Of a DNA stretch of 64,000 nt, positions 8,294 through 57,711 are shown piece after piece. The notes beneath the pieces were generated by a model. That model ran no database searches. It saw nothing but the letters and a program-made list of their open reading frames with translations, and was not told where the DNA came from. Position 1 is the stretch's first letter; the number at the start of each line of letters is the position of its first letter. Location: NCBI RefSeq assembly GCF_016432865.1, contig NC_067398.1:335730001-335794000 (forward strand), written 5' to 3'. This DNA is from Antechinus flavipes. Taxonomy: Eukaryota. The translations under genes and the position numbers were made by a program.

Positions 8294-9572
8294 ATGTTCA
8301 GCGCTGAAGAACGGAGCCACATCGTCCAGATTTGGAACTACCTGTCTGGTCATGAGGCCATTTTCGGGACTGAGTTGTTGCAGAGGTGATGCTCAGATAG
8401 GGTGGGGGAGGGAGTAGGGTGGGATACGGGGGCGGGGCAAGGGCAGACACTAAGTCCGCTCTCCCCCAACCCAGGAGATGAGAGAGAAGGGGTTCGGGGA
8501 CAAAGGGAGAGTGTCCCAGGTGATTTGGGGGGGAAGGTTGCCCAAGAGAAGTGAAGAGGAAGAGAGAAAGGCTGGAGGGAGCAGCCCAAGGTCTTCGGGC
8601 TGACGGGGAGGATGCTGCTAACCAGAGCTAAAAGGATGCGGATCCTGAGGATGAAGAAAGGAATCTGGTATCGCTTTGGGAGGCTTTTCCCTAGGAAGGT
8701 TTAAAGTGTGCCAAGTTAAAGCAGCTAAGATTAAGCGTTCCGAGAGGGGAGCAGTCTCACCTCTAGAGGGGAGCTGGTTGAGACCAAGCCAGAGAAAATA
8801 GAAAGGAGATCGTAGGGAGAATGGTGGGTGCTCCCACTCCTGCTCACGTTCCTTCCTTTCCTCCACTATCCACAGGTTGTTCACCGTATATCCCAGTACG
8901 AAAAGCTACTTCCCACCCTTGATCCCTGGCCTGGAGCTAACCCAGATGCAGAACCACGGGGAACAGATATTGATGGCCGTGGGTGTGGCCGTGGATAACA
9001 TGTATGATCTTCGGACTGCCCTGAGCGGTCTGGCTGATCTGCATGCCTACAGTTTAAGGGTGGAACCGACCAACTTCCATGTGAGCCTGGGAGCCCTTCT
9101 CTCCATCCATTCATTCTTCTTCCCAATCTTCAGTCTTCTCACTCAAACACTGTCAGTTCACCAGCCACCCTGACTCCCATTGTCCCTTCCCATCCATTCA
9201 TCCACAAGCCGATGCATGACTTAGACATTGGAATTGGAATCTCATTAGTTATAGGGAATTAGCAGTTCTATCTACTTTACTGTAAATGGGGAAAGATGGG
9301 GAATGCCCAGCCCAGATACCTCCACTGGCTTTTCCCATCAAGATGGATGTTGGGGCAGGAATTAGTATTCAGAGAGAAGGTCATGGGTTCTAAGTGGTCT
9401 CTGAGTCTTAATGATGCCTTCCATCCTCTCTGCCCTGCTGTAGTTCCTGATCCATTGTTTCCAAGTGATGCTGGCTTCCCACCTGCAGTCAGAATACACT
9501 GCAGAGATGCATGCAGCATGGGACAAGTTTCTGACCAATGTGGCGGTGGTCCTAACAGAGAAATATCACTGA
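8294..9572 (+). CDS. HBM: alphaD / mu-globin, intact, 141 aa
   Basis: Exons 8294-8385, 8876-9080, 9444-9572 (92/205/129 nt, GT-AG). [45 protein letters not shown]...[10 protein letters not shown]...[77 protein letters not shown] and CF.V.LASHLQ are HBM hallmarks. AATAAA at 9624. Confidence 0.95.
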
Positions 9573-14577: not shown

Positions 14578-17030
14578 CCATCTATCCTGATCTTCCAAGG
14601 AGCTGCATATCATAGGAAGGGATGGCAGCCTGACTGAAACTGGAAGGACCTTAGATATCACCTACACTAAATACCTCTCCTCATTTAACATATGGGGAAA
14701 CTGAGATCAAGGGAAGTTAAGTAATTTGCTCAAGTCCCTGCTGGACCCCTGCTGCCCTAAAGTAGGCACTGTGCTAAAGAATGAGTGACACCCACTAGGA
14801 GAATTACTTAGGGAGTATTCTCCTGGTAACCCTATAAAAGGACCATAGGGACTGCTGGGCCTTCATATTTCTGGTACTGCAAAGACCGGAGATAGAAGTT
14901 GAGATGGCGCTCTCTGCAAATGACAAGAATAACGTGAAGAGGATCTGGAGTAAGTGGATGGGAGGCAATGCTAGTGCTGAAGCCCTGTTGAGGTAAGGGC
15001 TCCCCTTCTTTTCCCCCTCTTTGCACTTCCTACATTCCCTAAATCCAACTCCTGTCCGGTAGACACATGGATGCCCTTAGAATCCAGACTCCCAAACACT
15101 TGCCTTCTCCGACCTGAGCCTAACAAGTCCCCTGGATCTTCTGAGCTCAGAATCCCTCCTCTCCTTCTTAGCCTGGACTGTTTCCCCCGTTTTCAACCCC
15201 TGGTCTAGTTCCAGGTGCCCAGTGGACAATGCTCGAGATGATACCCAGAATGAGTCCCTCTTTCTTCTTTCCTTCCCGCAGGACCTTCCTCTCCTTCCCC
15301 ACTACCAAGACCTACTTCTTAATCAATACGGCCCGGCTCTGTCGACGGTCAGCACCATGGTCAGAAGGTGCCCTTTCCCAGGCTGTTGCCAACCTGGATG
15401 ATCTGCGCATGACCCTGTCCAAACAGAGCTTCAAGCTGAAAATGGATCCTGTTAACTTCAAGTTGAGTCAGAGATCAAGGGACCCACCAGAGCTGGCGAA
15501 TGGGGATTCCCAGTAATGCTATATGCTAGCCACGCAGCTCCATTGAGGTGTAATGAAGATTTGGTATGGACAGATTACTGGATTCCGAGTTAGAGTGGCA
15601 TTTGACCGCGGTCAGGACGGGCGCAATGGGCGGCTGGAATACAAGACAGGTAAGGGAATGAAGCAGGCAGGGGCAGCGGGGGCAGGGAAGTGTGGGTGCC
15701 CACCTGACTCGGGAGCTGTCCCTTCTCTCCCAGCTCCTCTCTCACTGCCTGATAGTGACTCTGGCCCGTCACCTGAGCAAGGATTTGACTCACAAAGTGC
15801 ACGCCTACATGGATAATAAGTTCTTTGCCTCTGTGGCTGCCTCTATGCGCTGATCTCAAAGTACCGTTAGGTCTTCAGAGGCAAGGAATTTCCCTCACCC
15901 TGCTGCCCCAACTGGGCTGCGGATCCCTCGGTGTCCCCATCTCCTCTTACTCCGCACAGTCTGATGGACGTCTCCGAATAAAGTCCGAGTCTGCCACAAT
16001 TTGTGTGCGTTTGTCTTTTGCGTCTGGGGCTGAGCTGCTTGTCTTTGGGGGGGTGATGGTGGTGGAAGAGGTGTTGAGAGAAAGGGAACTCTATCCTGAC
16101 TTAACCTTCATTCCACAGCCCTGAAGGGATGGAGTGGGCAGGGAAAGCCTTGCGATAGAAATTGGAGAGCACTTGCACCCAGATCAGCTTCTTTGTGTAC
16201 TCTTGCAGCCCACAAACATCCTCACCCATTTTATTTGTTCCATTCTGTTAAAATCTTGCTTGTCATCTGAGTGAACAAGATTGGGTTTTCTAAATGAGGA
16301 AATGAAAGATTTTAAAACTTGATCTGGCCGTAAGAGGAGCTCCTTCACTAGAACTCAGAAAATGCACTATTCTTCCCTTAGCCTAGTTAACACCATAATT
16401 GGCATGTTTGCACAGAGGCTTTGTTGCCTGAATATACTGTCTGATGAGATTGGAAGGAGATGATAAACTGAGAAGTGACATCACTCTTCAACTGATCTTT
16501 CAGACAGAGTGAGAGAGGTTAGCCCAATACAATCTTAGCTCATTCTGAGGACGAGCAGAGTATAACCTTGGTATGCCCTGGGCTCTCCTTAGCAACTTTG
16601 AGACATTCTATAAGGAAACCAGAGACAGGTCATTTTAGGGAGGGACATTTCAAGAGAATCTCAGATGCCTTGGGCTAGAGACAGACTATTGCCTAGATCC
16701 CTGCACTCCCCCCCTCACCCCTCCAAAGCAAAATTTTGACTTTCCCCTTTCCTTTTCTTATTCTTTTTCTTGTGTTTACTTTTGCTGGTGTTCTTTGGCT
16801 GCTTGCATTCCTCACTGAGTTTGCAATGGCATATAGAGAACTGGGGAATGGGTTGGAACCAAAAACTTGATATAAATTGAATAGTTATGTTTCTTTGCTG
16901 AAACTATGACTGGACTGAGAATGACTTTCCATCCCTACCCATAGCACTTTCCTATGGATAGAGTAGGGTGAGCTCTACCACCAAAATTGGGCTCACTCAT
17001 TTACATGCTTCATCACTTGCAATAAGCCTA
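14578..17030 (+). repeat. alpha-globin duplication unit A
   Basis: 5' flank (ctatcctgat..ctgca.atcatagga..gcagcctga) matches 19733 onward and about 27950 onward; 3' flank (ttgcctgaatata..ctgatgaga..gatgataaa..catcactcttcaactg; cactcatttac..cacttgcaataa) matches 22100-22700 and 30300-30590. Confidence 0.85.
14904..15870 (+). pseudogene. alpha-globin pseudogene A
   Basis: Exon remnants 14904-14992, 15282-15462, 15734-15870. Exon-2 donor GT>TT at 15463. Indels scramble the CD/E region, a deletion removes the proximal His (cagagcttc in place of ctgagcgacctgcacgcccat), and exon 3 is frameshifted with an early TGA. CCAAT decayed to AGAAT (14778); TATAAAA kept (14833); AATAAA at 15977. Confidence 0.95.
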
Positions 17031-20518: not shown

Positions 20519-21516
20519 ATGGTGCTCTCTGGTGCTGACAAGGCTAACGTGAAGTCCGTGTGGAGTAAGGTGGGAGGCAACGCCGGTGCCTACGCAGGTG
20601 AAGCCCTTGCCAGGTAAAGGACTCCCCTCTCCTCCCCGGCCTTCGCGCTTCCTACCTATCCCCAGTCCCATAGATCCACGAATGCAGAATCCAAAAACCC
20701 AATCCAGGTCGGCAGACCTCCGACAGAAATCCGTCGAGTGTCCCGGGATCTTCTGAGCTCAGAACCCTTCCTCTCCTTCTTAGCCTGGACCGTTTCCCCC
20801 ATCCTCAACCCTGGCTCCAGCTCCAGGTGCCCAGTGGACAGCGTTCGGGATGATGCTCCAAATGAGTCCTCTTTCTTCTTTCCTTTCCGCAGAACCTTCC
20901 TCTCCTTCCCCACTACCAAGACTTACTTTCCCCACTTCGACTTGTCCCCCGGCTCCGCCGACGTCAAGGGTCATGGTCAGAAGGTAGCTGATGCCCTTTC
21001 CCAGGCTGTTGCCAACCTGGATGATCTGCCCGGAACCCTGTCCAAACTGAGCGACCTGCACGCCCATAAGCTGAGAGTGGATCCAGTTAACTTCAAGGTG
21101 AGTCAGGGATTGAGCGACCCACCGGGGGGAAGCGAAGGGACCGGGGCTGGTGACTGGATGCCCAGTGCAGCCAGTAAGGTCGCTTTTGAGTGTAATGGTT
21201 CCTACAATGAACCCTTGGCATGCGGGGCAGATTACTGGATTTCAGGGTAGAGCAGGGTTTGAGCGCGGTCAGGACGGGGGCAGCGGGCGGGTGGAGTACG
21301 AGACAGGTAAGGGAAGGAAGCAGGCAGGGGCAGTGGGGGGAGGGAAGTGTGGGCGCTCACCTGACTCGGGAGCTGTCCCTTTTTCAGCTCCTCTCTCACT
21401 GCCTGATCGTGACTCTGGCCTGTCATCTGAGCAAGGATTTGACTCCCGAAGCCCACGCCTCCATGGACAAGTTCTTTGCCTCTGTGGCTACCGTGCTGAC
21501 CTCCAAGTACCGTTAA
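20519..21516 (+). CDS. HBA: adult alpha-globin, intact, 142 aa
   Basis: Exons 20519-20613, 20893-21097, 21388-21516 (95/205/129 nt, GT-AG). [142 protein letters not shown]. His58 and His87 present; AATAAA at 21626. Confidence 0.98.
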
Positions 21517-27330: not shown

Positions 27331-30300
27331 GGTAATTATCCAATAGGGATGTCAATTTCTTCATCTGTATAGGAAGGGGTTGGATTCAATGATTTCTGAG
27401 CTGCCTTTCAGCTCTAAGTCTATGATGTTATGGACCCCAGGATAGCTCCTTGCAGTACAACTTTCATCCTCAGCACAGCTATTTCAGGAATGGTGGGGCT
27501 GGAGAGGAGAGCGCTTCCCTGCCCAGGTGCCTCTCAGCTGGTCAGGATGCTTCTTAGGGAGGTCAGGGAAAGGAACCTCCAACTTGACTGCTGCAATGAC
27601 TGTGACTTGTGAGTGAGTCAGAATGTGTGACTGGGCTGTCCTTGATCTTCTTCTATATGTGTTTGAGCCTCATGGCATTCCTAAAGGATAGTTTGTTCAG
27701 ATGACAAAGTGACTCAGTGGTAGAGAAGGAACTGTCCTGTCTCCTGCACTTCGGGACAGAAAACCCCAGGGTTTGTCCTCATTTGCCTCCCAGGTTACTA
27801 GTGTGAGCATAAAGAAAGACCCCTCAGTGTGAATGTGGGCCAGGACCAGACATTCCTATACAAATGTTGCACTGATCTGGGTTCCCTTCCCCTTTCCCTC
27901 CTCTGTCTTTAAATCTGTAGCATCTGAGTATGGAACCGTCTGATTCTTCTGTCCTGATTTGTTAGGGAGCTGCACATCATAGGATGAGGGTGGCAGCCTG
28001 AGTGAGAGCTGGAAAGGACTTTGGATGTCACCTACACCAATTGCTTCTCCTCAGTTTTCAGATGGGGAAACTGAGATCCAGAATGTTAAGTAATTTTTTT
28101 CCCATAAAGTATTAATTGAGAGATCCAGGTGATTTGTACCCAGGTCCCTTATTTCAATCGACATCATTTCAAAGCCCCCATTCTGCTTCCCAAAAGGTAG
28201 GAGAGGAATGTAATGGAAAACTGCAGGTGAATGGGATTGATTATTTACTTTTGATTTTACTCATTTATTATTATTATATTTAATAATTTGATTTTAATAA
28301 TATATTATATTTATGATCATTATTTACTTATTGATTATTTAATTTATTATTTGATTATTTACAAACCTAATATGTGCCATACTGCGCTCAACTTTTTTTC
28401 AATTATTATCTCTTTTGATGTTCACAGCCCTGAATAGTAGGTGCTATTTTACCCCTATTTTACAGACGAGGAAACTGAGAAAAACAGAGGTGAGGTGACT
28501 TGTCCAAGTTCACACAGCTAGGAAGATTCTGGGGCCATATTTGAACTCAGGTCACCCTGTCTCCGGTTCTCGTACTTGGGATTGCCCCAACCTGAGTGCA
28601 AAGGAGAAAAGTCCCAGACGTAGAGCCTGCGCAGAGCCTCTTCTGCAGTCGGGGAGCCCGAGATAGACGGGAGCACAGCGCCCCCCGGAGGGGGTGCACA
28701 AACGCGACACCGTCTGGGTCTGTCACTCAGCTGGGCCCCTGGCACCCTAAAACAGGTACTGTGCCAACCAATGAGCGACGCCCACCGCGGAGCCACCCCG
28801 AAGCGTGGCTGTGAGGCTTGGGACGGTGTATTTCTGGTCCCGAGAGAGCCCAGAAGGAAGCCAAGAGGGCGCCCTCTGCGAATGACAAGACCAAGGTGAA
28901 GGCCGTGTGGAGCAAGGTGGGGGGTCAACGCCGGTGCCTAGGCAGGTGAAGCCCTCACGAGATAAGGGGCCGCCTCCTCGCCTCGCTTCCTCACCTCCTA
29001 CCCTGCCTGTACCCGGTCCCCAGGCCTAGAGACTCACGGGGGCCCTGCGGCATCTAGTGACCTACTCCAGGTCCAGAAGCTTCAATACCTGCCTTCCCCA
29101 GCCTGGGCCCATCGAGTGTCCCGGGACCTTCTGTGCTCAGAATCCCTCCTCTCCTTCTTAGCCTTTCTTCTTTCCTTCCCGCAGGACCTTCCTTCTCCTT
29201 CCCCACTACCAGGACCTTCTTCTTAATGAATACGGCCCCGGCTCTGACGACATTCAGCACCATGGTCAGAAGGTGCCCTTTCCCAGGCTGTTGCCAACCT
29301 GGATGATCTGCCCGGGACCCTGTCCAAACTGAGCGACCCGCACGCCATAAGCTCAGAGTGGATCCAGTTAACTTCAAGGTGAGTCAGGGATCGAGCGACC
29401 CACCGGGGGGGGGGGGGGGGGAGGAAGCTGAGGGACCGGGGCTGGTGACTGGATGCCCAGTGCAGCCAGTAAGGCCGCTTCTTTGAGTGTAATGGTTCTT
29501 ACAAGGAACCCTTGGCATGCGGGGCAGATTACTGGATTTCAGGATAGAGCAGGGTTTGAGCGCGGTCAGGACGGGCGCAGTGGGCGGGTGGAGTACGAGA
29601 CAGGTAAGGGAAGGAAGCAGGCAGGGGCAGTGGGGGGAGGGAAGTGTGGGCGCCCACCTGACTCGGGAGCTGTCCCTTTTTCAGCTCCTCTCTCACTGCC
29701 TGATCGTGACTCTGGCCTGTCACCAAGGACTTGACTCCCGACCTCGAAGTACCGTTAAGTTGAGAAGCCAGAGATTTCCACTGCCTGCCGCCATCATCCG
29801 GGCTGCGGGCCCCTCGGTGTCCCCAATCCCTTCCATCCTGCTGGCGCAGATGGGACGTCTCCGAATAAAGTCTAAGCCTGCCACCGCTTGACTGTGTGCG
29901 TTTTTCTCCTGAATCTGGGGCTGGGATGCAGAGGTGGAGGAGGTGTGAAGAGCTACAGGGAACCCGTCCTGAAACATGGTTCCTTCCACACCCCTGAAGA
30001 GATGGAGGTGGGTAGAGAAGGCCTTGCAGCAGAATTGCGAAATCACCTGCACCAAAACAGCCTCCTGAGGTTTCCTGCCCTACCCCCTGCCCCTTTTGCA
30101 GACCCTCTCAAGCATCCTCACTTCTACTCCATTTTGTTTTTTATATGTGTTATAGGCAACGACTGTGATCTCTGTGTAGTAAGTTTGGGTTCTCTAAGGT
30201 CTTGCTCTGGAAGGAACTCCCTCAGGAGAACTGAGAAAGTTCAGTGTACCCACTTTATTCTACTTGTTTCCTTAATTTAAGTGTTTGCACAGAGACCTTG

Positions 30301-40147: not shown

Positions 40148-40994
40148 ATGGCCCTGTCCCCGGCAGACAAGTGCAACGTGAGAGAATTCTGGGAAAAACT
40201 GGGTGAGAACACCAAGGTGTACGGCACTGAAGCCCTGGTGAGGTGAGGCAACACCCAGCACGTGAATGCGCCACTTCCCCGAGCCCAGAACCCGGCGTGG
40301 CCCCGCTCTCGGCCGGTTCCCGGGACCCCTCCTCTCTCCCGCTCCCCAGCCTTGGGACCCCAGGCCGCGTTCTCGCGTCCCGCCGCCGCCTCTCGGCAGC
40401 CGCTGGCGATCCCTCGCTCCCTGGCCGGCTCTCCCTTCTTTGCCCCACTCCCGGGTCCGGGCCTCCCTCAGCCTGCCCTCCTTTTGGTTGGCAGGACCTT
40501 TCTTTGTTTCCCCGAAACCAAGACCTACTTCCCCCACTTTGATCTCTCCGGGGGCTCCCGCCAGGTTCAGGCTCATGGCAAGAAGGTGGCAGACGCCCTG
40601 ACTTTGGCCGTCAGCCACCTGGATGACTTGCCAGCCTCCCTGTCGTCCCTGAGCGATCTCCACGCCCACAGACTCAAGGTGGATCCCATCAACTTCAAAG
40701 TGAGTGGAAACCCGGGGGGGTGGGAGGCAAGAGGGGGTCTAGGGAGTTGGGCCAGCGAAGAGAGAGAGAGGTTCGGTCCAGAATTCGGGGCTAGTGACGT
40801 CTGAGAACTGGGCCCCCCCAAGATCCGACCCGGTCTGATCCCGCACCCGCCTCTTCTCTCCCCAGCTCCTGTCTCACTGTTTGCTCGTGACCCTGGCGAG
40901 GCACCATCCAGGCAACTTGAACCCCGAGGTGCACGCTTCTCTGGACAAGTTCCTGAGCTCCGTGTCCTCCGTGCTAACGTCCAAGTACCGTTAA
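40148..40994 (+). CDS. HBQ1: theta-globin, intact ORF, 142 aa
   Basis: Exons 40148-40242, 40495-40699, 40866-40994 (95/205/129 nt, GT-AG). [142 protein letters not shown]. Called theta from divergent exon 1 and its position 3' of the alpha genes. AATAAA at 41047. Confidence 0.88.
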
Positions 40995-43441: not shown

Positions 43442-43987
43442 NNNNNNNNNNNNNNNNNNNNNNNNNNNNNNNNNNNNNNNNNNNNNNNNNNNNNNNNNNN
43501 NNNNNNNNNNNNNNNNNNNNNNNNNNNNNNNNNNNNNNNNNNNNNNNNNNNNNNNNNNNNNNNNNNNNNNNNNNNNNNNNNNNNNNNNNNNNNNNNNNNN
43601 NNNNNNNNNNNNNNNNNNNNNNNNNNNNNNNNNNNNNNNNNNNNNNNNNNNNNNNNNNNNNNNNNNNNNNNNNNNNNNNNNNNNNNNNNNNNNNNNNNNN
43701 NNNNNNNNNNNNNNNNNNNNNNNNNNNNNNNNNNNNNNNNNNNNNNNNNNNNNNNNNNNNNNNNNNNNNNNNNNNNNNNNNNNNNNNNNNNNNNNNNNNN
43801 NNNNNNNNNNNNNNNNNNNNNNNNNNNNNNNNNNNNNNNNNNNNNNNNNNNNNNNNNNNNNNNNNNNNNNNNNNNNNNNNNNNNNNNNNNNNNNNNNNNN
43901 NNNNNNNNNNNNNNNNNNNNNNNNNNNNNNNNNNNNNNNNNNNNNNNNNNNNNNNNNNNNNNNNNNNNNNNNNNNNNNNNNNNNNNN
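43442..43987. other. assembly gap (546 N)
   Basis: Run of N. Confidence 1.
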
Positions 43988-47010: not shown

Positions 47011-49032
47011 CACAAAATAAATGGCAGGGTGGGGGGTGGGGGATTACTATTGACAGAACCAGAAGTCCAGAGCCCTTGGAGAGGGGAGAAGTTAGGGGAG
47101 AACAGATTCTGGTCAGCTGCCCTGGACTAAGCAGGCTCCTAAATCAAGTAATAACTCCTTAGATGCCTACTGTGAGCCAGGAACTGTGCTGAATTCTGAA
47201 GACATAAAAAAGCAAAGGATCGGCCTTCAAGGAACTGACAATCTATTTCTTGTCTGATCAGGGAGACAAATATTTAAAAACAAGCTATACACAGGATAAA
47301 TAGGAGATAGTTAACAGAGGGAAATCACTAGAACTGAGGGATGGGGAAAAACCCCCTATAGAAGGTAGAATTTTAGTTGGGACATGAGAGAGAGAGAGAG
47401 CATTTCAGGCATGGAGCACAATCAGAAAAAAACCCTAGGAGTGAAGAGGAGTGTTAGGGTCACTAGTCTAGTGTTTCAGCCCCTGCCTTTGCCACTGAGC
47501 ACTGGCTATTGGCTTATGCTGAGTCCTGTGAACAAAGTTCAAAGGAAATATGACTTCCATCTGAGGCTTAGGAGCTAAAAGGATGAGACAGAGAGGAAGG
47601 CTTCAGTTTCCATACAGACTCCTGACAGGAATCCCCGATTTTCTCAGTACAAGATTCTGGCTGCATTTATAGCTGGATGAATCAGGAAGTGGAATTAGGC
47701 AGAGGGTTTCCACATCTGGATCAGAATATGGGCGGGACACAGATCAATACACAGGTGGTTGAAGGGGACTGGACGCTGAAGAAGGCATCAGAACCATTTC
47801 CTCATAAATGATCTTAGGAGTTCCTATCCAGTGGGGAGAACCATGTCTATACTGAGCTTTGTCCATGTGACCTCAAGCGAAGCTTTTTTGTAGGCTTTCT
47901 TACCACAGAATCATGATCCATACATGGATTATACTTTGAACTTGATAATAGTCAAATCATTTAACTTAATCAAAAATATAGTATTGTTTAGCTCATTTAA
48001 GAGTATATCTGAAAATTTTAGTTTTCTACTTGGTTTTGGTTTGCAGTCCATTAAAAAGGCCAAAGTCTCCCATTTCATCCAGGGTCATTTCCAATTGTCC
48101 TGATCTATATCTGTCCACTGGACCCAGGTGGCTCTGGAGGGGAAAGTGAAGCAGGTGATGTTGAATAGCCTTCCCTCACTTCAGTCCAATTCACTTACAT
48201 GTCATAGCATCACCCTCCTAATGTCACGATCCCCTTCAAGAACAAAGGACAAATACAGAACCTTCTAAAATACTTCAGTTCTGGAGGCCAATTCTCGACT
48301 CTCCCAGACCACTCTCCTTCCCTACAGAGGAAGTCACTTAAAGCCCTAGCCATCTTGCTTTGGACAAACCCCCTCCCTCTGTCCCCCAGCCCCCACAACT
48401 TCCTCTATGTCCCGGAGATGTTGGAAGAAGGTCCTGGCATCTGCATAGGCAGCTCCCTCATGAGGAGGGAAAAGAGAAAAACTGAATTCCAAGGATTCTT
48501 GGAGTAGAATCCAATGGGGCTATGAATTGGGCGGATCTGGCCCAGAGCTCTAGGGAAAGGGGGTGATGAGACAAGAGTTGATGGTGCTTGTGGGGGAATA
48601 TTGTGAGGTTGCTGAATTCACTGAATGGGAGTGAACTGGAAGACATTGAAGATTAATGTAATACTAGGAATAAATAGGTTGAAATTGAATGAGATAAGGG
48701 AGCTCTGTGGAAAATGGGGAGGCTGCGACTGAATAGGGTGAAGAAGACAAAGGGAAGATCACTCTGGTGATCAGGGTGAGCTGAATTTGGGTACCGAGGC
48801 TGAGGGCAAGTTTGTGGGTTGAATCTACAAATCCACCTTTTCCCTGGCACTACCTAGGGACAGACCCACTGAAATCAAAAAGGGCTTTAAAAGAGCAATC
48901 TTTGATCAAGAAGAAGCAGGTGGTGAATTAGCTAAACGCATTGCTCCCCCCTTCATGTTAGCCCTTTGGTATTCCTCTCCCAACCCCCAAACCAGGAGCC
49001 TTTGGCCACATCCTCAGTGCCCTCAGAGCTGA

Positions 49033-49082
49033 CCAATAGGAAAGGAGTTGGGTGGGGCGAGCACTGCGGCCGGAGGATAAAA
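49033..49082 (+). promoter_or_regulatory. omega-globin promoter
   Basis: CCAAT 49033-49037, gggtgggg (reverse CCCCACCC, KLF1-type) about 49050-49057, GATAAAA 49076-49082 at the TATA position. Confidence 0.8.
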
Positions 49083-49177
49083 GGAGAGCCCTTGAGCCAC
49101 TGACCACAGCACTCAGCTTCCACCTCTCTCTCCTGCAGTCTCTACTCAGGCGTGTCTCCACCCTCTCACAACCAACC

Positions 49178-50199
49178 ATGGTGAACTGGACAGCAGAAGA
49201 GAAACAGGCCATTTCTAGCATCTGGGCCAAAATTGACATCGAGGAAGTGGGGGCCGGTGCTCTTAGCAGGTGGGAGAAGAGACTCGGGCTGTTGCCCGGC
49301 TTGGGGCTAAACTGGGTTAGGCTGGGGTCATGAATGCTTTCTCTGCTAACCAAAAAGGTCGGGAGGTAGGGAACTGAGGGGATATTGGCTAAAGGCCTTG
49401 TATGAACTGGCCTGGAAAAACCCTTGGCTGACCATCCTCTCTCTCTCTCTGGTTTCCAGGCTGTTAGTTGTCTATCCCTGGACCCAGAGGTACTTCAGCA
49501 ACTTTGGGAACCTGTCCAGCCCACGAGCCATTGAGGGGAATCCCCGGGTCAGGAATCATGGCAAGAAGGTGCTGACCTCATTTGGGGAGGCTGTGAAGAA
49601 CCTGGACAATGTGAAGCCACCTTTGACAAGCTGAGCGAGCTGCACTCAGACAAGCTGCACGTGGACCCCCAGAACTTCAGGGTGAGTGCCCTTGTACTTC
49701 CCCCAAGTTTGGGGGACAAGCCCTACAGATTCTAAAAATGTGGAAGGTCCTTGGCTGGGCATTTTTGAATTTCTCCAAAGACAGGGAGCTCCCTCCTTCT
49801 CCATAATGGCTTCAAGTATTTAAAAAGAGATCCTCTCTCCTTCCCTTTTCCAACCTCACCTTGTCTCTGAGCTAACAATCCCCCCTCCCTCAGGGACCTC
49901 GAAACAGAGACCCCCTTCTACTCCCTGGGAATGTTGCTTTTCCTAAAATGTTACTACTGACCCAGCTTCAGGTTCCCCTAGGGGCCCAATGCACTTCCCC
50001 AGACTTGCAGCCATTCTCCCACTGTACAGAGACTGCCCAGACCTGATCCTCTGTCCTCTCTTCCTTCCAGCTCCTTGGAGACAACCTGATCATTGTCCTG
50101 GCAGCCACCATGGGCAAGGACTTCACTCCCGAGGCCCAAGCTGCCTGGCAGAAGCTGGTGGGAGTGGTGGCCTCCGCCCTGAGCAGAAAATACCACTGA
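49178..50199 (+). CDS. HBW: omega-globin (beta-like chain in the alpha cluster); 1-bp deletion frameshift in exon 2 as assembled
   Basis: Exons 49178-49269, 49460-49681 (222 nt, expected 223), 50071-50199. [51 protein letters not shown]...[20 protein letters not shown]/[A][63 protein letters not shown]. As written, the frame hits TGA at 49632-49634. AATAAA at 50275. Confidence 0.92.
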
Positions 50200-52689
50200 A
50201 TACCTCCAGGACGTCACTCCTAGAGTTGGGGGTGGGTGGGATATGTGCTACCTCCATACATAGTGATTATGGTTAATAAAATAAAGTTGAATTACTTGAC
50301 AAATTTTTGTCTAGTTGTCTCTTTGGGGGAAGGTAAAAAGATGTTTTTGAGGGTCTAGGATAAAAGGGAACATAGCTGCTTTTTCAAAAGGTTGAATAGG
50401 CTTTTAAACCTCCCCACAAACTTCCCTCTTCCTAATTCTGACCACGGAGTCTGTGTCAATAATTGGACTAGAAGGTCCAGGGGCTAGGTGAGGGACAAGT
50501 AACTTCCAGAATTACAATGCTGGGCAGGGAGACTATGGGAAAATAGTGCAGAACTAATGAGGCCTGGAAGAAAAAAAACTCAAAAAACCAAAAAACCCAA
50601 CTCTGAGGCGGAGCCAGATCCAGATGCTTTCTGCAGCCTATTTATCCCCAAAATCCTATTTCCTAGCTCTACACAGCAGTTAAACAGGAAATCTCCTGAT
50701 ATTCCCCATAATGAAAAAAGGATCAGGTGACAGAAAGGGAGAAAAGTGGCTTTGGATTCTTGAAGTCTTGCAAATTGAGTCACTCAAGTTTGAATTGAGC
50801 AGATCTGTATTTAATCCAGTCCAGCAGAATTAGAAAACGACCATGTTACTAAATTCATTGTTTCCACAAATTGGAGTGATCATTTAGAATAGCTGTTCTC
50901 ATATTGCTGTGAATTAGGACCATTTTATATTTCTAAGCTTTATGAAGATGTTTCTTCTTTTACAAGGTGATTTCTAACCCATAACTATAACAAACGTTAT
51001 TGAATAACTTTTAAATGGTTCTGCCTCAGTTTTCGTGATGTAATAAAAAAAAAAAATACCTGGGGGAAAAAACTCTGATATCCTAATTGGATGCTCTGGA
51101 AAGAAATATGTAATGAGGATGTTTATGGTGCTTATTAAGCACATCCTTAATCTTTCACTTGGAAGCAAGTCCAAAGAATGTTATCCTAATGTTACTTTCT
51201 AAGAGAGGAAGAAAAAAGATTTATTATGGGAAATTCCCAATTAAGACTATGTTGTTGGGGTAGAATGCGAAGAATTTAAGACTTTCATTTTAACTTTGAA
51301 ATTATAAGTTAATGTGACAACTTTAATTTGTTGTTTTTACAAGAATCGTAAGAAATCTTAAGAAAATGGGAGATTTAGAATAACATCTGAAAATCAAGGA
51401 AAATAAAACATTTTTTATATGAAATATCAAATAAACTTTATTTAGTAGTATGAAAATGTCAGTTTCATGGTGCAGTAGGATATAAATGATACAATCCTTG
51501 TTTATCACTGGTGGATTTCTCTTATGAAAAGTTGAGTTGTGAATCTGAAATCTTAATTCTACTACCCTAGTTAGGATATTTTGTACAACTTAAAATTTCA
51601 AGGGATGGAAAGACATTTTAAATACTGTCTTGAATGCTGACAGTTTTAAGTATTTTTCCTGAAAAATCTATTTGAGCATGTATATAGGTCAGGAGAAGTT
51701 TGATTGCCTTAACTCACTCCAGAAAATAAGAAAGTGGATTGAAATTCAGTACAGATGATTTCTTAAAAACCTAGGTGATTAACAGATTGTCAATTTAAAA
51801 AAAAATTTTTATCAATGTGGGAAAATCAAGGACTAAAGCTGATGAACAGTATCTCTTTTGCAGTAGTAGTCTGTAGCACAGAACAACTGGGAATGAAGCT
51901 CTTTAAACTTTTCTTTTGAATGTTTAATAAAAATTAGTTGAATTTAAAAAGAAAACAGAATTAAGGTAACTTTTGGTAAGTTGGGTCATAGGGAGCTTCT
52001 GCCTGATTCCTGGGTTTCCTTACATGGCAAAAAAGAGGAACCTTCCTTTTCTCAAAATTTTTTCATCCTTCAAGGTTGACTTCAAATCTGACCTCCTTCA
52101 GGAAATTTACACTGATTCCTAAAACTTAATTTCTAAAACACTTTAGCATATGCATCCCTCATTTGGCCTTTAGCTAATGCTCCCTCACACTATAGTTTGC
52201 TTCCCTAACAAGACTGAGTTCTAGGGAGGGATGTCTGCTTCATACGAACTGCCCAGTACTATTCACTGCTAGGGATAAAACATATACATGTTGAATAACA
52301 GTACTCTATTCACAGCTCTGGGGACTCCTTTTTAGGCTATATCAGTTCTGTAGAGCATCTTTTGTTCATGGAACAGAGTATCAAAGCTAAGAGTAAACAA
52401 AATATAAAATACCAATGATTATCAAGATATTTGAAGATGAAATACTAGGAGAATGCAGCTAGATTTAACTAGATAAAAAGCTGATCTCTTGAGTCGAATA
52501 AGTTGGATTCAGTTCTAGCATCTGACATACTGTGTAACCCTCAACAAAAGTCATTTAACCTTTCAACGCCTCTAGAAAAATTCTATTAAAAGATTTCATT
52601 GAAGGTGACAGCCAATCTGCCTTGTGAGTAAAAATTTCCTCATTAGGAGGTCCCTTGGATCAATAAAATCACAAGTCATGGTTCTTTTT

Positions 52690-53015: not shown

Positions 53016-54179
53016 AAATATTAGAACATAGAATAATATCCAGATGGAAATCTGTAAATTATCTTGTTCAGCCACTCCATTTTACAAAGGAAATAAGCAC
53101 AAGGAGAAATTATTTTAGAGGTCATGTCTAAGACTGGGGTGAAGGAGAAAGTTCTTAGTAACCCTTTTCTTAATAACCCTCCTCCCCAAATTCCCTTTTA
53201 TTTCCCTGCAGGAACTGGAGTGTAAGTTGGGTATAAAAGAGAAAGTATAGGTCAGTGATAGGGGGGAAGAAAGCAGGTCAGGGCCCTTCTTGCTGCTTCT
53301 AAGGGTTGAGATATTTTAGCACTTCACTTGGGATCCCCTCCACCCCCCTACCTTTATAGCCCAACATGAGATGCTGTGCACATATGCAGAGCAGATGACC
53401 CATGAATGAGATGAAAAGTGCACTTCTCACAATAGGAACAAAAAGTTCCTCTCCCTGTTAGGGTCTCTAATACTTTTGAGGCCAAATTATAAAAATGATT
53501 TAAAATGGAATATTTGTGTGTGTGTGTACTGACTTCTGTGTAATATGCTACCGTGTCAAGTGTCAATTTTCATTTAGCAAAGACAACAAGATTGACGTCA
53601 TCAAGGCATTATCTCAGTTATGGATCTAGACTGAACCAGCTATATAATCCATCCCCACTTACCAGCAACAAAGAATAAGTCTTCATAACGTGTAAGCTCC
53701 ATTATCAGTCTGCCAAGAAGAAATGAGTTATTTTATGTACTTTTTGGTATTTATTTATCTCTGTATTCCCCTCTCCTCATTAGAATAAAAGCTCCTTAAA
53801 GGACTATTTCAGTTTTTGATTTTATATCCCTAGTACCTAGCACAATGGCCAGCACATAGAAGGTTCTTAATAAATCCTTGTTGAATTGGAGGGGGAAAAA
53901 AAGCTAAGACATCCCTCATCTTGTTTTCTTATCTCTAAGGACTGGATTACAGCAGTAACAAAATCTAATTAGATGAGTCACATGATTCAGGCAATTTTAT
54001 TTTTTACCATTTGGTGGTAAACAGCAAATTTAATAAGATCTTAAAATTTGTCCTGTGGCAGATTTTATCATTTGAACTTTTGTCTATTGCATGGAAGGCC
54101 ATTCTGATGACAGACATGTCCTTAATACACTTAAGAAACTTAGCATAATAATTCTGAATTTGAAACAATTCTAGAATCA

Positions 54180-55460
54180 GAGGACATTGTTGTGGAATTG
54201 TGAACAGATCCAGCCATTCTTGAGCGCAGTTTGGAACTCTGTCCAAAGAGCTATCAAACTGTACGTACCCTTTGATCCAGCAGTGGCTCTACCTCCGTAT
54301 CTCAAGGAAATCATAAAAATGGGAAAAGGACCCACATGTGCACAAATGTTTGTAGCAGCCCTTTTTGTGGTGGCACGAAACTGGAAACTGAAAGGGTGCT
54401 CATTAGTTGGGGAATGGCTGAATAAATTGCAGTATATGAATGTTATGGAATATTATTGTTCTGTAAGAAATGACCAGCAGGATGAATACAGAGAGGACTG
54501 GCGAGACTTACATGAACTGATGCTAAGTGAAATGAGCAGAACCAGGAGATCATTATACACTTCGACAACGATATTGTATGAGGACATATTTTGATGGAAG
54601 TGGATTTCTTTGACAAAGAGACCTGAGTTTCAATTGATAAATGACGGACAAAAGCAGCTACACCCAAAGAAAGAACACTGGGAAACGAATGTGAACTATC
54701 TGCATTTTTGTTTTTCTTCCCGGGTTATTTTTACCTTCTGAATCCAATTCTCCCTATGCAACAAGAGAACTGTTCGGTTCTGCAAACATATATTGTATCT
54801 AGGATATACTGCAACATAGCCAACATATATAGGACTGCTTGCCATCTAGGGGAGGGGTTGGAGGGAGGGAGGGAAAAAAAAAATCGGAACAGAAACGAGT
54901 GTCAATATAAAGTAATTATTAAATAAAAATTAAAAAAAAAAAAGAAATGACCAACAGATCATTTGAACATAAATACAATATGAATACAGAGAAGGCCTAG
55001 AGAGACTTAGATGAACTGATGCTAAGCAGAAGCAAGAGATCATTGTACACAGCAACAATAAGATTATATGAGGATCAATTCTGGTGGACTTGGCTCTCTT
55101 CAACAATGAGATGATTCAGGCCAGTTCCAATGATCTTGTGATGATGAGAGCCATCTACACCCAGAGAGGACTGTGGGAACTGAATGTGAAGCACCACATA
55201 GTATTTTCACTTTTTTGTTCTTCGCTTATGTTTTTTTTTTCAATTTTTTTTCTTTTTGATCTGATTTCCATTGTGCAGCTTGCTGCATATAATTGTATAA
55301 ATAAGTATGCATATATTGGATTTAATACATATTTTAACATGTTAAACATCTAGGGGATGGAATGGGGGGAAAACTGGAACACAAGGTTTTGCAGGGTCAA
55401 TGTTGAAAAATTATCCATGTATGTTTTGAAAATAAAAAGCTTTAATAAAAAAAGTTAAGT
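54180..55460 (+). mobile_element. older L1 3' fragment with a younger L1 3' end (54481-54941) inserted in register
   Basis: ORF 54187-54594 encodes the L1 ORF2 C-terminus. Poly-A at about 54932-54943. The 16-mer aagaaatgacca(g/a)cag is duplicated at 54465-54480 and 54942-54957. Confidence 0.8.
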
Positions 55461-56605: not shown

Positions 56606-57711
56606 ATAAACTGGGAAAACATTTTTACAATCAAAGGTTCTGATAAAGGCCTCATTTCCAAAATATATCAAGAATTGACTCTAATTGATAAGAAATCAAA
56701 CCATTCTCCAATTGATAAATGATCGAAGGATATGAACAGACAATTCTCAGATGAAGAAATTGAAACTATTTATAGACATATGAAAATATGCTCCAAATCA
56801 TTATTAATCAGAGAAATGCAAATTAAGACAACTCTGAGATACCACTACACACCTGTCAGATTGACTAGAATGACAGCGAAAGACAGTGCAGAATGTTGGA
56901 GGGGATGTGGGAAAACAGGGACACTGATACATTGTTGGTGGAGTTGTGAACACATCCAGCCATTCTGGAGAGCAATTTGGAACTATGCTCAAAAAGTTAT
57001 CAAACTGTGCATACCCTTTGATCCAGCAGTGTTTCTATTGGGCTTATATTCTAAAGAGATACTAAAGAAGGGAAAGGACGTGTATGTGCCAAAATGTTTG
57101 TGGCAGCCCTCTTTGTAGTGGCTAGAAACTGGAAAATGAAAGGATGTCCATCAATTGGAGAATGGCCGAGTAAGTTACAGTATATGAATGTATGGAATAT
57201 TATTGTTCTGTAAGAAATGACCAGCAGGATGAATACAGAGAGGACTGGCGAGACTTATATGAACTGATGCTGAGTGAAATGAGCAGAACCAGGAGATCAT
57301 TATATACCTCAACAACGATACTGTTTGAGGATGTATTCTGATGGAAGTGGATCTCTTCGATAAAGAGAGCTAATTCAGTTCCAATTGATCAAAGATGGGC
57401 AGAAGCAGCTACACCCAAAGAAAGAAAACTGGGAGATGAATATAAACTGCTTGCATTTTTGTTTTCTTCCCGGATTATTTACCCTTCTGAATTCAATTCT
57501 CCCTGTGCAACAAGAAAACTGTTCGGCTCTGCAAATGTATATTGTATCCAGGATATACTGTAACCTATTCAACATGTAAAGGACTGCTTGCCATCTGGGG
57601 GAGGCGTGGAGGTAGGGAGGGGAAAAATCGGAACAGAAGTGAATGCAAGGGATAATGTTGTAAAAAATTACCCTGGCATGAGTTCTATCAATAAAAAGTT
57701 ATTAAAAAAAA
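56606..57711 (+). mobile_element. young 5'-truncated L1 with perfect TSD
   Basis: ORF 56732-57118 encodes the L1 ORF2 cysteine-rich C-terminus (CWRGCGKTGTLIHCWWSC). Poly-A tail. 15-bp TSD agaattctcctgtta at 56591-56605 and 57712-57726; TT/AGAA endonuclease-type site. Confidence 0.93.

What the first reader, a model, noticed from the sequence alone, without database searches (positions are those of the whole stretch)
49611..49634. Omega-globin has a single-base frameshift in an otherwise pristine gene
Exon 2 is 222 nt rather than 223. The sequence reads GTG AAG CCA CCT TTG ACA AGC TGA, whereas inserting one G gives AAG GCC ACC TTT GAC AAG CTG AGC GAG CTG CAC ([11 protein letters not shown]). 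The stop comes before the proximal His, so the product could not bind haem and the transcript would be an NMD target. Promoter, all splice sites, exon 3 and the polyA signal are intact. This is either a very recent loss or segregating null of the marsupial neonatal omega chain, or a GG>G homopolymer assembly error. The gap elsewhere in the window shows this is a draft assembly.
Basis: partly seen in the sequence, partly recalled or inferred. Interest (0 to 1): 0.75.

Follow-up and report, generated by a model that had tools for sequence, protein, structure and literature searches.

The report
Omega-globin frameshift is an assembly error
The one-base gap that seems to break this marsupial's newborn-stage omega-globin gene is missing only from the assembled sequence; independent sequencing of two animals of the same species and of two close relatives all shows the extra G, so the gene is intact and ordinary.

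Summary
In the window, omega-globin exon 2 (49460-49681) is 222 nt, not 223. The frame slips at AAGCC (49614-49618) and a TGA follows at 49632-49634. Everything else in the gene is canonical.

The frameshift is not in the species' reads. I laid contigs of four public runs on 48900-50400: two samples of the window's own species and two sister species. All four carry one extra G behind 49615 (AAGGCC), at word depths of 17-54. In the two same-species samples that G is the only difference in 1501 nt.

With the G, the reading frame is a 147-codon beta-like globin with both haem histidines. The sister species add only one coding change, and it is synonymous.

The gene is a normal omega-globin:
- It is the last gene of the alpha-globin cluster, downstream of the theta-position gene.
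- It is 79-92% identical to the UniProt omega-chain fragment P81041.
- It resembles bird beta chains most closely.

Verdict: a consensus (GG>G) error of a draft assembly, about 0.9. A private or heterozygous null allele in the reference animal is not excluded, about 0.07. The scan's unverified notes list similar lone one-base frameshifts in other genes of this genome. This finding was not made before on other DNA.

The parts
49033..49082 (+). Promoter elements: CCAAT at 49033, inverted CACCC (GGGTG) at 49050, ATAAAA box at 49077
   Evidence: Motif positions; sequence. Function is inferred from the usual beta-globin promoter layout and was not tested.
49178..49269 (+). Exon 1 coding part, 92 nt ([30 protein letters not shown] plus 2 nt of the Arg codon)
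   Evidence: It is 79% identical to residues 1-29 of the UniProt omega-chain fragment P81041.
49460..49681 (+). Exon 2: 222 nt in the window, 223 nt in all four read-derived contigs
   Evidence: Pfam Globin E=8.3e-13 before the break and 0.0047 after it.
49614..49618 (+). Site of the missing base: the window has AAGCC, the contigs of four runs have AAGGCC (G put in behind 49615)
   Evidence: table 4. Depth with the G / total depth is 27.4/27.4, 30.2/30.2, 17.2/17.2 and 54.4/54.4.
49632..49634 (+). TGA that appears in frame only because of the missing base
50071..50199 (+). Exon 3 coding part, 129 nt including TGA ([42 protein letters not shown])
   Evidence: Pfam Globin E=6.1e-6. The best solved-structure matches are beta chains, residues 105-146.
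50275..50285 (+). Two adjoining AATAAA polyadenylation signals
40508..40994 (+). Upstream neighbour: the last alpha-type globin gene of the cluster (theta position), exon 2 to the stop codon
   Evidence: motifs, SKYR* at 40977-40994. In one search exon 2 matches PDB alpha chains 36-99 at E about 1e-31.

Best explanation
The gene is an ordinary, intact marsupial omega-globin: the beta-like globin at the 3' end of the alpha-globin cluster, which pairs with alpha-like chains around birth. The single-base frameshift in exon 2 is a consensus error of this draft assembly, where one G of a GG pair was dropped (AAGGCC written as AAGCC). It is not a lesion in the animal's genome. In the real sequence exon 2 has 223 nt. 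The reading frame then runs ...[16 protein letters not shown]... through the proximal histidine into exon 3, giving the standard 147 codons. Shown here: the G is present in four independent runs, and the gene's identity and genomic context. Inferred: that the dropped base arose during assembly rather than being a private allele, and that the gene is expressed.
For: One search is the main evidence.
- Contigs of X1 and X2 (two samples of organism A) have 0 other letters against the window over 1501 nt. X3 (organism B) and X4 (organism C) are close relatives. Each run spans the whole stretch in one piece, and each has 'G put in behind 49615', at depths 27.4, 30.2, 17.2 and 54.4.
- In X1 and X2 that G is the only difference.
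- B and C differ from the window at 11 substituted sites. Ten are non-coding, eight of them in intron 2. One is in exon 3 (50130 C>T, CCC>CCT, Pro, synonymous). None changes an amino acid.

the two frames on either side of the site are both open, and both match the Globin profile in continuous register. The distal His (HGKKV) and the proximal His (LSELH) are both present.

splice sites, promoter boxes and poly(A) signals are canonical.

the genuine dead alpha-like copies in the same window look different. They share 4-nt and 7-nt deletions, so the lone 1-nt gap in omega is not what real decay looks like here.

Searches are leads only and were not tested. Other first-stage notes on this genome report lone one-base frameshifts in PIAS3, TTC31, ICAM1, AAK1 and a BTN2A-like gene.
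Against: All four runs were available only as Logan contigs, which drop minority variants. A heterozygous deletion allele in X1, X2 or the reference animal would therefore not show. One of X1 or X2 may itself be the assembly's source sample, so the two are not certainly independent of it. GG is a very short homopolymer, not a classic error hotspot. The raw reads and the method behind the assembly were not seen. No RNA run was laid, so expression is not shown.
Confidence: 0.9

Rival explanations
1. The reference animal really carries a one-base deletion allele, private or rare, heterozygous or homozygous. The assembly reports that haplotype faithfully, and it is a segregating null of omega-globin.
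For: The window does read AAGCC. Contigs cannot show minority alleles (caveat stated). The reference animal's raw reads were not examined.
Against: Two samples of the same species carry the G and are otherwise identical to the window over 1501 nt. The only difference would then have to be a loss-of-function indel in a coding exon, with no accompanying SNP. By general reasoning, not a tool result, a residual consensus indel in a draft assembly is far more likely per gene than a private frameshift. The scan's unverified notes list similar lone frameshifts in other conserved genes of this genome.
Confidence: 0.07
2. Omega-globin has been lost recently in this species, that is, the frameshift is fixed or common and the gene is a young pseudogene.
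For: Only the window sequence itself.
Against: Both same-species samples and both sister species have the intact 223-nt exon. There is no second lesion and no amino-acid change among the three species.
Confidence: 0.01
3. The gene is read through the break by a programmed mechanism such as ribosomal frameshifting or RNA editing that inserts a base.
For: None found.
Against: The DNA of four runs already holds the extra G, so no such mechanism is needed. None is known for vertebrate globins (my own knowledge).
Confidence: 0.005

Closest known systems
Marsupial omega-globin (tammar wallaby omega chain, UniProt P81041; gene described by Wheeler et al. 2001, cited in PMC2529266 and PMC11691648)
   Same: It is a beta-like globin with three coding exons, and the last gene of the alpha-globin cluster after the theta-position gene. 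It is 23/29 and 22/24 identical to the 54-residue omega fragment. Its protein resembles bird beta chains most closely, as the literature describes for omega (PMC2529266).
   Different: It is about 85% rather than 100% identical to P81041 over 53 aligned residues, so it comes from another marsupial lineage. It has Ser where beta chains usually have Cys93. The window copy lacks one G, which the reads restore.
Bird beta-like globins (for example pheasant rho-like partial protein P0001, and solved bird beta chains such as 1faw, 1a4f, 1hbr, 2r80; species assigned from my memory)
   Same: These give the highest similarity outside marsupials: 83% over exon 2, and the top-ranked solved structures for both exon 2 and exon 3.
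   Different: The genomic context differs: bird beta genes lie in the separate beta cluster among olfactory receptor genes (PMC2529266). Exon 1 is less similar to the pheasant protein, about 19/30 by eye from the sequences.
Unprocessed globin pseudogenes (such as the two alpha-like copies in this window at about 15.3 kb and 29.3 kb)
   Same: As written in the window, omega has a frame-breaking lesion inside an otherwise globin-like gene.
   Different: The real pseudogenes carry several shared multi-base deletions. Omega's single lesion is absent from all read-derived contigs.

Membership tests
omega-globin (beta-like globin of the marsupial/monotreme alpha cluster) | Beta-type gene structure: three coding exons of 92, 223 and 129 nt with GT-AG introns | tested here: met
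   The window has 92 / 222 / 129 nt. Exon 2 is 223 nt in the contigs of four runs.
omega-globin (beta-like globin of the marsupial/monotreme alpha cluster) | Lies at the 3' end of the alpha-globin cluster, downstream of theta, in the same orientation | tested here: met
   Alpha-type genes on the + strand lie at about 4.5-5.3 kb, 8.9-9.6 kb, 15.3 kb, 20.9-21.5 kb, 29.3-29.8 kb and 40.5-41.0 kb. Omega at 49.2-50.2 kb is the last of them. No further globin motif follows. Layout as in PMC2529266.
omega-globin (beta-like globin of the marsupial/monotreme alpha cluster) | Sequence match to a protein already named omega chain | tested here: met
   P81041 'Hemoglobin subunit omega' is 79% identical over exon 1 and 92% over the start of exon 2. 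Only 54 residues of the known chain were available.
omega-globin (beta-like globin of the marsupial/monotreme alpha cluster) | At protein level, closer to bird beta-like globins than to therian beta, gamma or epsilon | tested here: met
   For exon 2 the ten best solved chains score 88.6-85.5 bits, against human epsilon 85.3, gamma 76 and beta 67. For exon 3 the same set of chains and no mammalian chain reach E<=1e-12. The best word-search hit is pheasant rho-like. Caveats: the species of the PDB entries come from my memory, no marsupial beta or epsilon was compared, and no tree was built.
omega-globin (beta-like globin of the marsupial/monotreme alpha cluster) | Haem-binding residues present (distal His E7, proximal His F8) | tested here: met
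   HGKKV is in the first frame. LSELH is in the frame that the reads' extra G joins to it.
omega-globin (beta-like globin of the marsupial/monotreme alpha cluster) | [quoted passage not shown] | not tested
   This is stated for the tammar wallaby in PMC2529266 and PMC11691648.
young unprocessed pseudogene / null allele | The disabling lesion is present in the organism's DNA, not only in the assembly | tested here: not met
   All four runs have the G. A minority allele in the reference animal cannot be excluded from contigs.
young unprocessed pseudogene / null allele | Signs of relaxed constraint: further lesions or amino-acid changes | tested here: not met
   There is no other lesion. Among three species there are 0 amino-acid changes and 1 synonymous change. 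The numbers are small: by my binomial estimate, 1 coding site out of 11 variable sites is not significantly fewer than expected (p about 0.12).

The most novel reading that the evidence does not exclude
The reference animal carries a genuine, probably heterozygous, one-base deletion in omega-globin. That would be a naturally segregating null allele of the marsupial perinatal beta-like chain, and would allow a test of whether omega is dispensable for pouch young.
Probability: 0.07. Interest if true: 0.35.

Novelty: not a real feature. Interest (0 to 1): 0.07.

Why it matters
A real loss would have been the first reported natural knockout of the marsupial omega-globin. That gene is retained since before the split of monotremes and therians, and is thought to serve oxygen transport around birth. 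The reads show that no such loss exists in this species. The practical value is a warning: this assembly holds at least one single-base consensus deletion inside a conserved coding exon. Other lone frameshifts in it, including those listed in the scan's notes for PIAS3, TTC31, ICAM1, AAK1 and a BTN2A-like gene, should be checked against reads before being read as gene loss. An annotation pipeline would wrongly call this omega-globin a pseudogene or a low-quality protein.

Tried and rejected
- Fixed or recent pseudogenisation: rejected.
- Search for full-length omega orthologues: the exon-2 word search can only see proteins of 29-91 residues. It returned 8 fragments, one of them the named omega fragment. 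No full-length marsupial omega, beta or epsilon sequences were obtained, so no tree was built. The large representative search was not used, because identity was settled by the family scan, the named fragment and the genomic context.
- Wheeler et al. 2001 (PMC14715) is not held. Its content is cited only through PMC2529266 and PMC11691648.
- A LUC7L exon or a GBY relic in the 14 kb after omega: none seen, only L1 ORF2 fragments. This was a crude scan and does not show absence.
- Testing constraint from the three-species differences: the numbers are too small to be significant.
- Comparing the two zeta-like genes to look for another pristine gene with a lone frameshift. The second copy is only 71% like the first over the one segment that aligned, the 117 nt at the end of exon 3, and it is not pristine. 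It says nothing about the assembly error rate.
- No part of the N run at 43442-43987 was filled or looked up.

Full report
**What the window says**

The gene on the + strand at 49178-50199 has the classic beta-globin layout:
- Exon 1 is 49178-49269, 92 nt.
- Intron 1 is 190 nt (GT...AG).
- Exon 2 is 49460-49681.
- Intron 2 is 389 nt (GTGAGT...CAG).
- Exon 3 is 50071-50199, 129 nt with TGA.

Exon 2 is 222 nt, one short of the universal 223. In the frame inherited from exon 1 it reads [57 protein letters not shown], with TGA at 49632-49634. Starting one base further on, at 49616, it reads [22 protein letters not shown] up to the donor. Exon 3 then reads [42 protein letters not shown].

Pfam Globin matches the three pieces in continuous register: profile 8-56, 61-81 and 83-117. 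So exactly one base is missing within AAGCC at 49614-49618. CCAAT, an inverted CACCC, ATAAAA and two AATAAA signals sit where expected.

**The decisive test**

The look-up of sequencing runs found 20 runs that hold the stretch or part of it. Two of them, X1 and X2, hold 99% of its sampled words. They are two samples of coded organism A from one study. Close relatives hold 81% (X3, organism B) and 79% (X4, organism C).

I laid X1-X4 on 48900-50400. Each run covers the whole 1501 nt in a single contig, at word depths 27.4, 30.2, 17.2 and 54.4. Table 4 lists 'put in behind 49615: G' in all four runs at full depth. That gives AAGGCC and a 223-nt exon.

For X1 and X2 this is the only difference from the window: 0 other letters and 1 gap.

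With the G, the two open frames join as ...[16 protein letters not shown].... The codon count is 30 + 1 (split Arg) + 52 + 22 + 42 = 147, the standard beta-like length (arithmetic). I did not build or search the joined protein; see the referred step.

**What the relatives add**

Organisms B and C differ from the window at 11 substituted sites and by small intron deletions (2 nt at 49437, 3 nt at 49796).
- One site is upstream (48936).
- Eight are in intron 2.
- One is in the 3' UTR (50212).
- One is in exon 3 (50130 C>T). It is the third base of a CCC Pro codon, so it is synonymous.

No amino-acid change and no other lesion is seen in three species. That fits a gene under constraint, but the counts are too small to be significant on their own.

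**Caveats on the reads**

All four runs were served as Logan contigs, not raw reads. Contigs show that the G allele exists in each sample. They cannot show that an AAGCC allele is absent, for example in a heterozygote. The tool also warns that X1 or X2, being near-identical, may be the DNA's own source.
- If one of them is the source, the assembly disagrees with short reads of its own animal. That points to a consensus error or to the other haplotype.
- If neither is, the reference animal could still carry a private allele.

I put that residual possibility at about 7%. Three things argue against it. The window is otherwise identical to both samples over 1.5 kb. A private difference that happens to be a coding frameshift, with no neighbouring SNP, is unlikely a priori. 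And a draft assembly with an N gap 5.6 kb upstream (43442-43987) is expected to hold residual single-base errors.

The scan's own unverified notes list similar lone one-base frameshifts in other conserved genes of this genome: PIAS3, TTC31, ICAM1, AAK1 and a BTN2A-like gene. One note reports frameshifts clustered at homopolymers in a gap-bounded segment. I did not test these and use them only as a lead.

**What the gene is**

Motif scans of the six frames show alpha-type globin genes, all on the + strand:
- about 4.5-5.3 kb, zeta-like;
- 8.9-9.6 kb, a second embryonic-type copy with a broken frame;
- 15.3 kb and 29.3 kb, alpha-like copies with broken frames;
- 20.9-21.5 kb, an intact alpha;
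- 40.5-41.0 kb, the theta position.

Exon 2 of the 40.5-kb gene matches solved alpha chains, residues 36-99, at E about 1e-31. The beta-like gene at 49.2-50.2 kb is thus the last globin of an alpha cluster. This is the position that defines omega-globin in marsupials and monotremes (PMC2529266).

A word search with exon 2 returned the UniProt entry P81041, 'Hemoglobin subunit omega', a 54-residue fragment. It is 23/29 identical to exon 1 and 22/24 identical to the start of exon 2. The best-scoring hit was a pheasant rho-like beta globin at 83%.

Against solved structures, exon 2 and exon 3 both rank the same set of beta chains first: 1faw, 1a4f, 1hbr, 2r80, 3a59, 3mjp, 2zfb, 3wtg and others. 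From my memory these are bird haemoglobins. They rank ahead of human epsilon, gamma and beta. This protein-level likeness to bird beta chains is the published hallmark of omega (PMC2529266). [quoted passage not shown] Expression was not tested here.

**Contrast with real pseudogenes in the same window**

The alpha-like copies at about 15.3 kb and 29.3 kb share a 4-nt and a 7-nt deletion in exon 2 relative to the intact alpha, and have further private lesions. Real decay here looks like that. A lone missing base in a gene that is otherwise perfect, and that reads restore, does not.

**Verdict**

The frameshift is in the file but not in the species. The most likely cause is a GG>G consensus error (0.9). 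A private or heterozygous null allele in the reference animal remains possible (0.07). A fixed loss is excluded. The gene is a normal member of a known family. Interest is low, apart from the warning it gives about single-base frameshifts elsewhere in this assembly.

**Limits and rules observed**

- The spliced protein was examined exon by exon, by reference only.
- The N run was left untouched.

Noticed in passing
window 15279-15475 and 29170-29392 (compared with 20890-21110): Two alpha-like globin copies share the same 4-nt and 7-nt deletions in exon 2 relative to the intact alpha gene. The 15-kb copy has a further 12-nt deletion and a mutated donor (GT>TT). They are real pseudogenes that were duplicated or gene-converted after the lesions arose, not assembly errors.
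   Followed up: partly
window 8889-9572: A second embryonic-type alpha-like gene (YPSTKSYF..., ...VLTEKYH*) has a broken exon-2 frame. It aligns with the zeta-like gene at 4.4-5.3 kb only over the 117 nt at the end of exon 3, at 71% identity. It may be the psi-zeta' or an alpha-D/mu-type gene. This was not resolved, and it was not checked against reads.
   Followed up: partly
window 49646-49648 (codon after the proximal His): Omega here has Ser (LHSDKLH) where beta chains usually carry the reactive Cys93. This could matter for S-nitrosylation or redox chemistry of the perinatal haemoglobin. It was not compared across marsupial omega genes.
   Followed up: no
window 49682-50070 (intron 2): Eight of the 11 substituted sites among organisms A, B and C, plus a 3-nt deletion, fall in intron 2. 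Intron 1 has no substitution, only a 2-nt deletion in organism C. Omega-globin is used as a nuclear marker in dasyurid phylogeography (PMC7563968, PMC11349609).
   Followed up: no
window 54175-54591 and 56723-57115: These are open pieces resembling LINE-1 ORF2 C-terminal parts, downstream of omega. No LUC7L exon or GBY relic was recognised in the 14 kb after the gene, though the scan was crude.
   Followed up: no
window 43442-43987: A run of 546 N lies between the theta-position gene and omega. Its odd, estimated-looking size suggests scaffolding by paired data.
   Followed up: no
other pieces of the same genome (scan notes s1-189055, s1-184946, s1-184872, s1-208923, s1-189927, s1-204759): Several first-stage notes report lone single-base frameshifts in otherwise intact conserved genes of this assembly. 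After the omega result, these deserve the same read check before being taken as gene loss.
   Followed up: no
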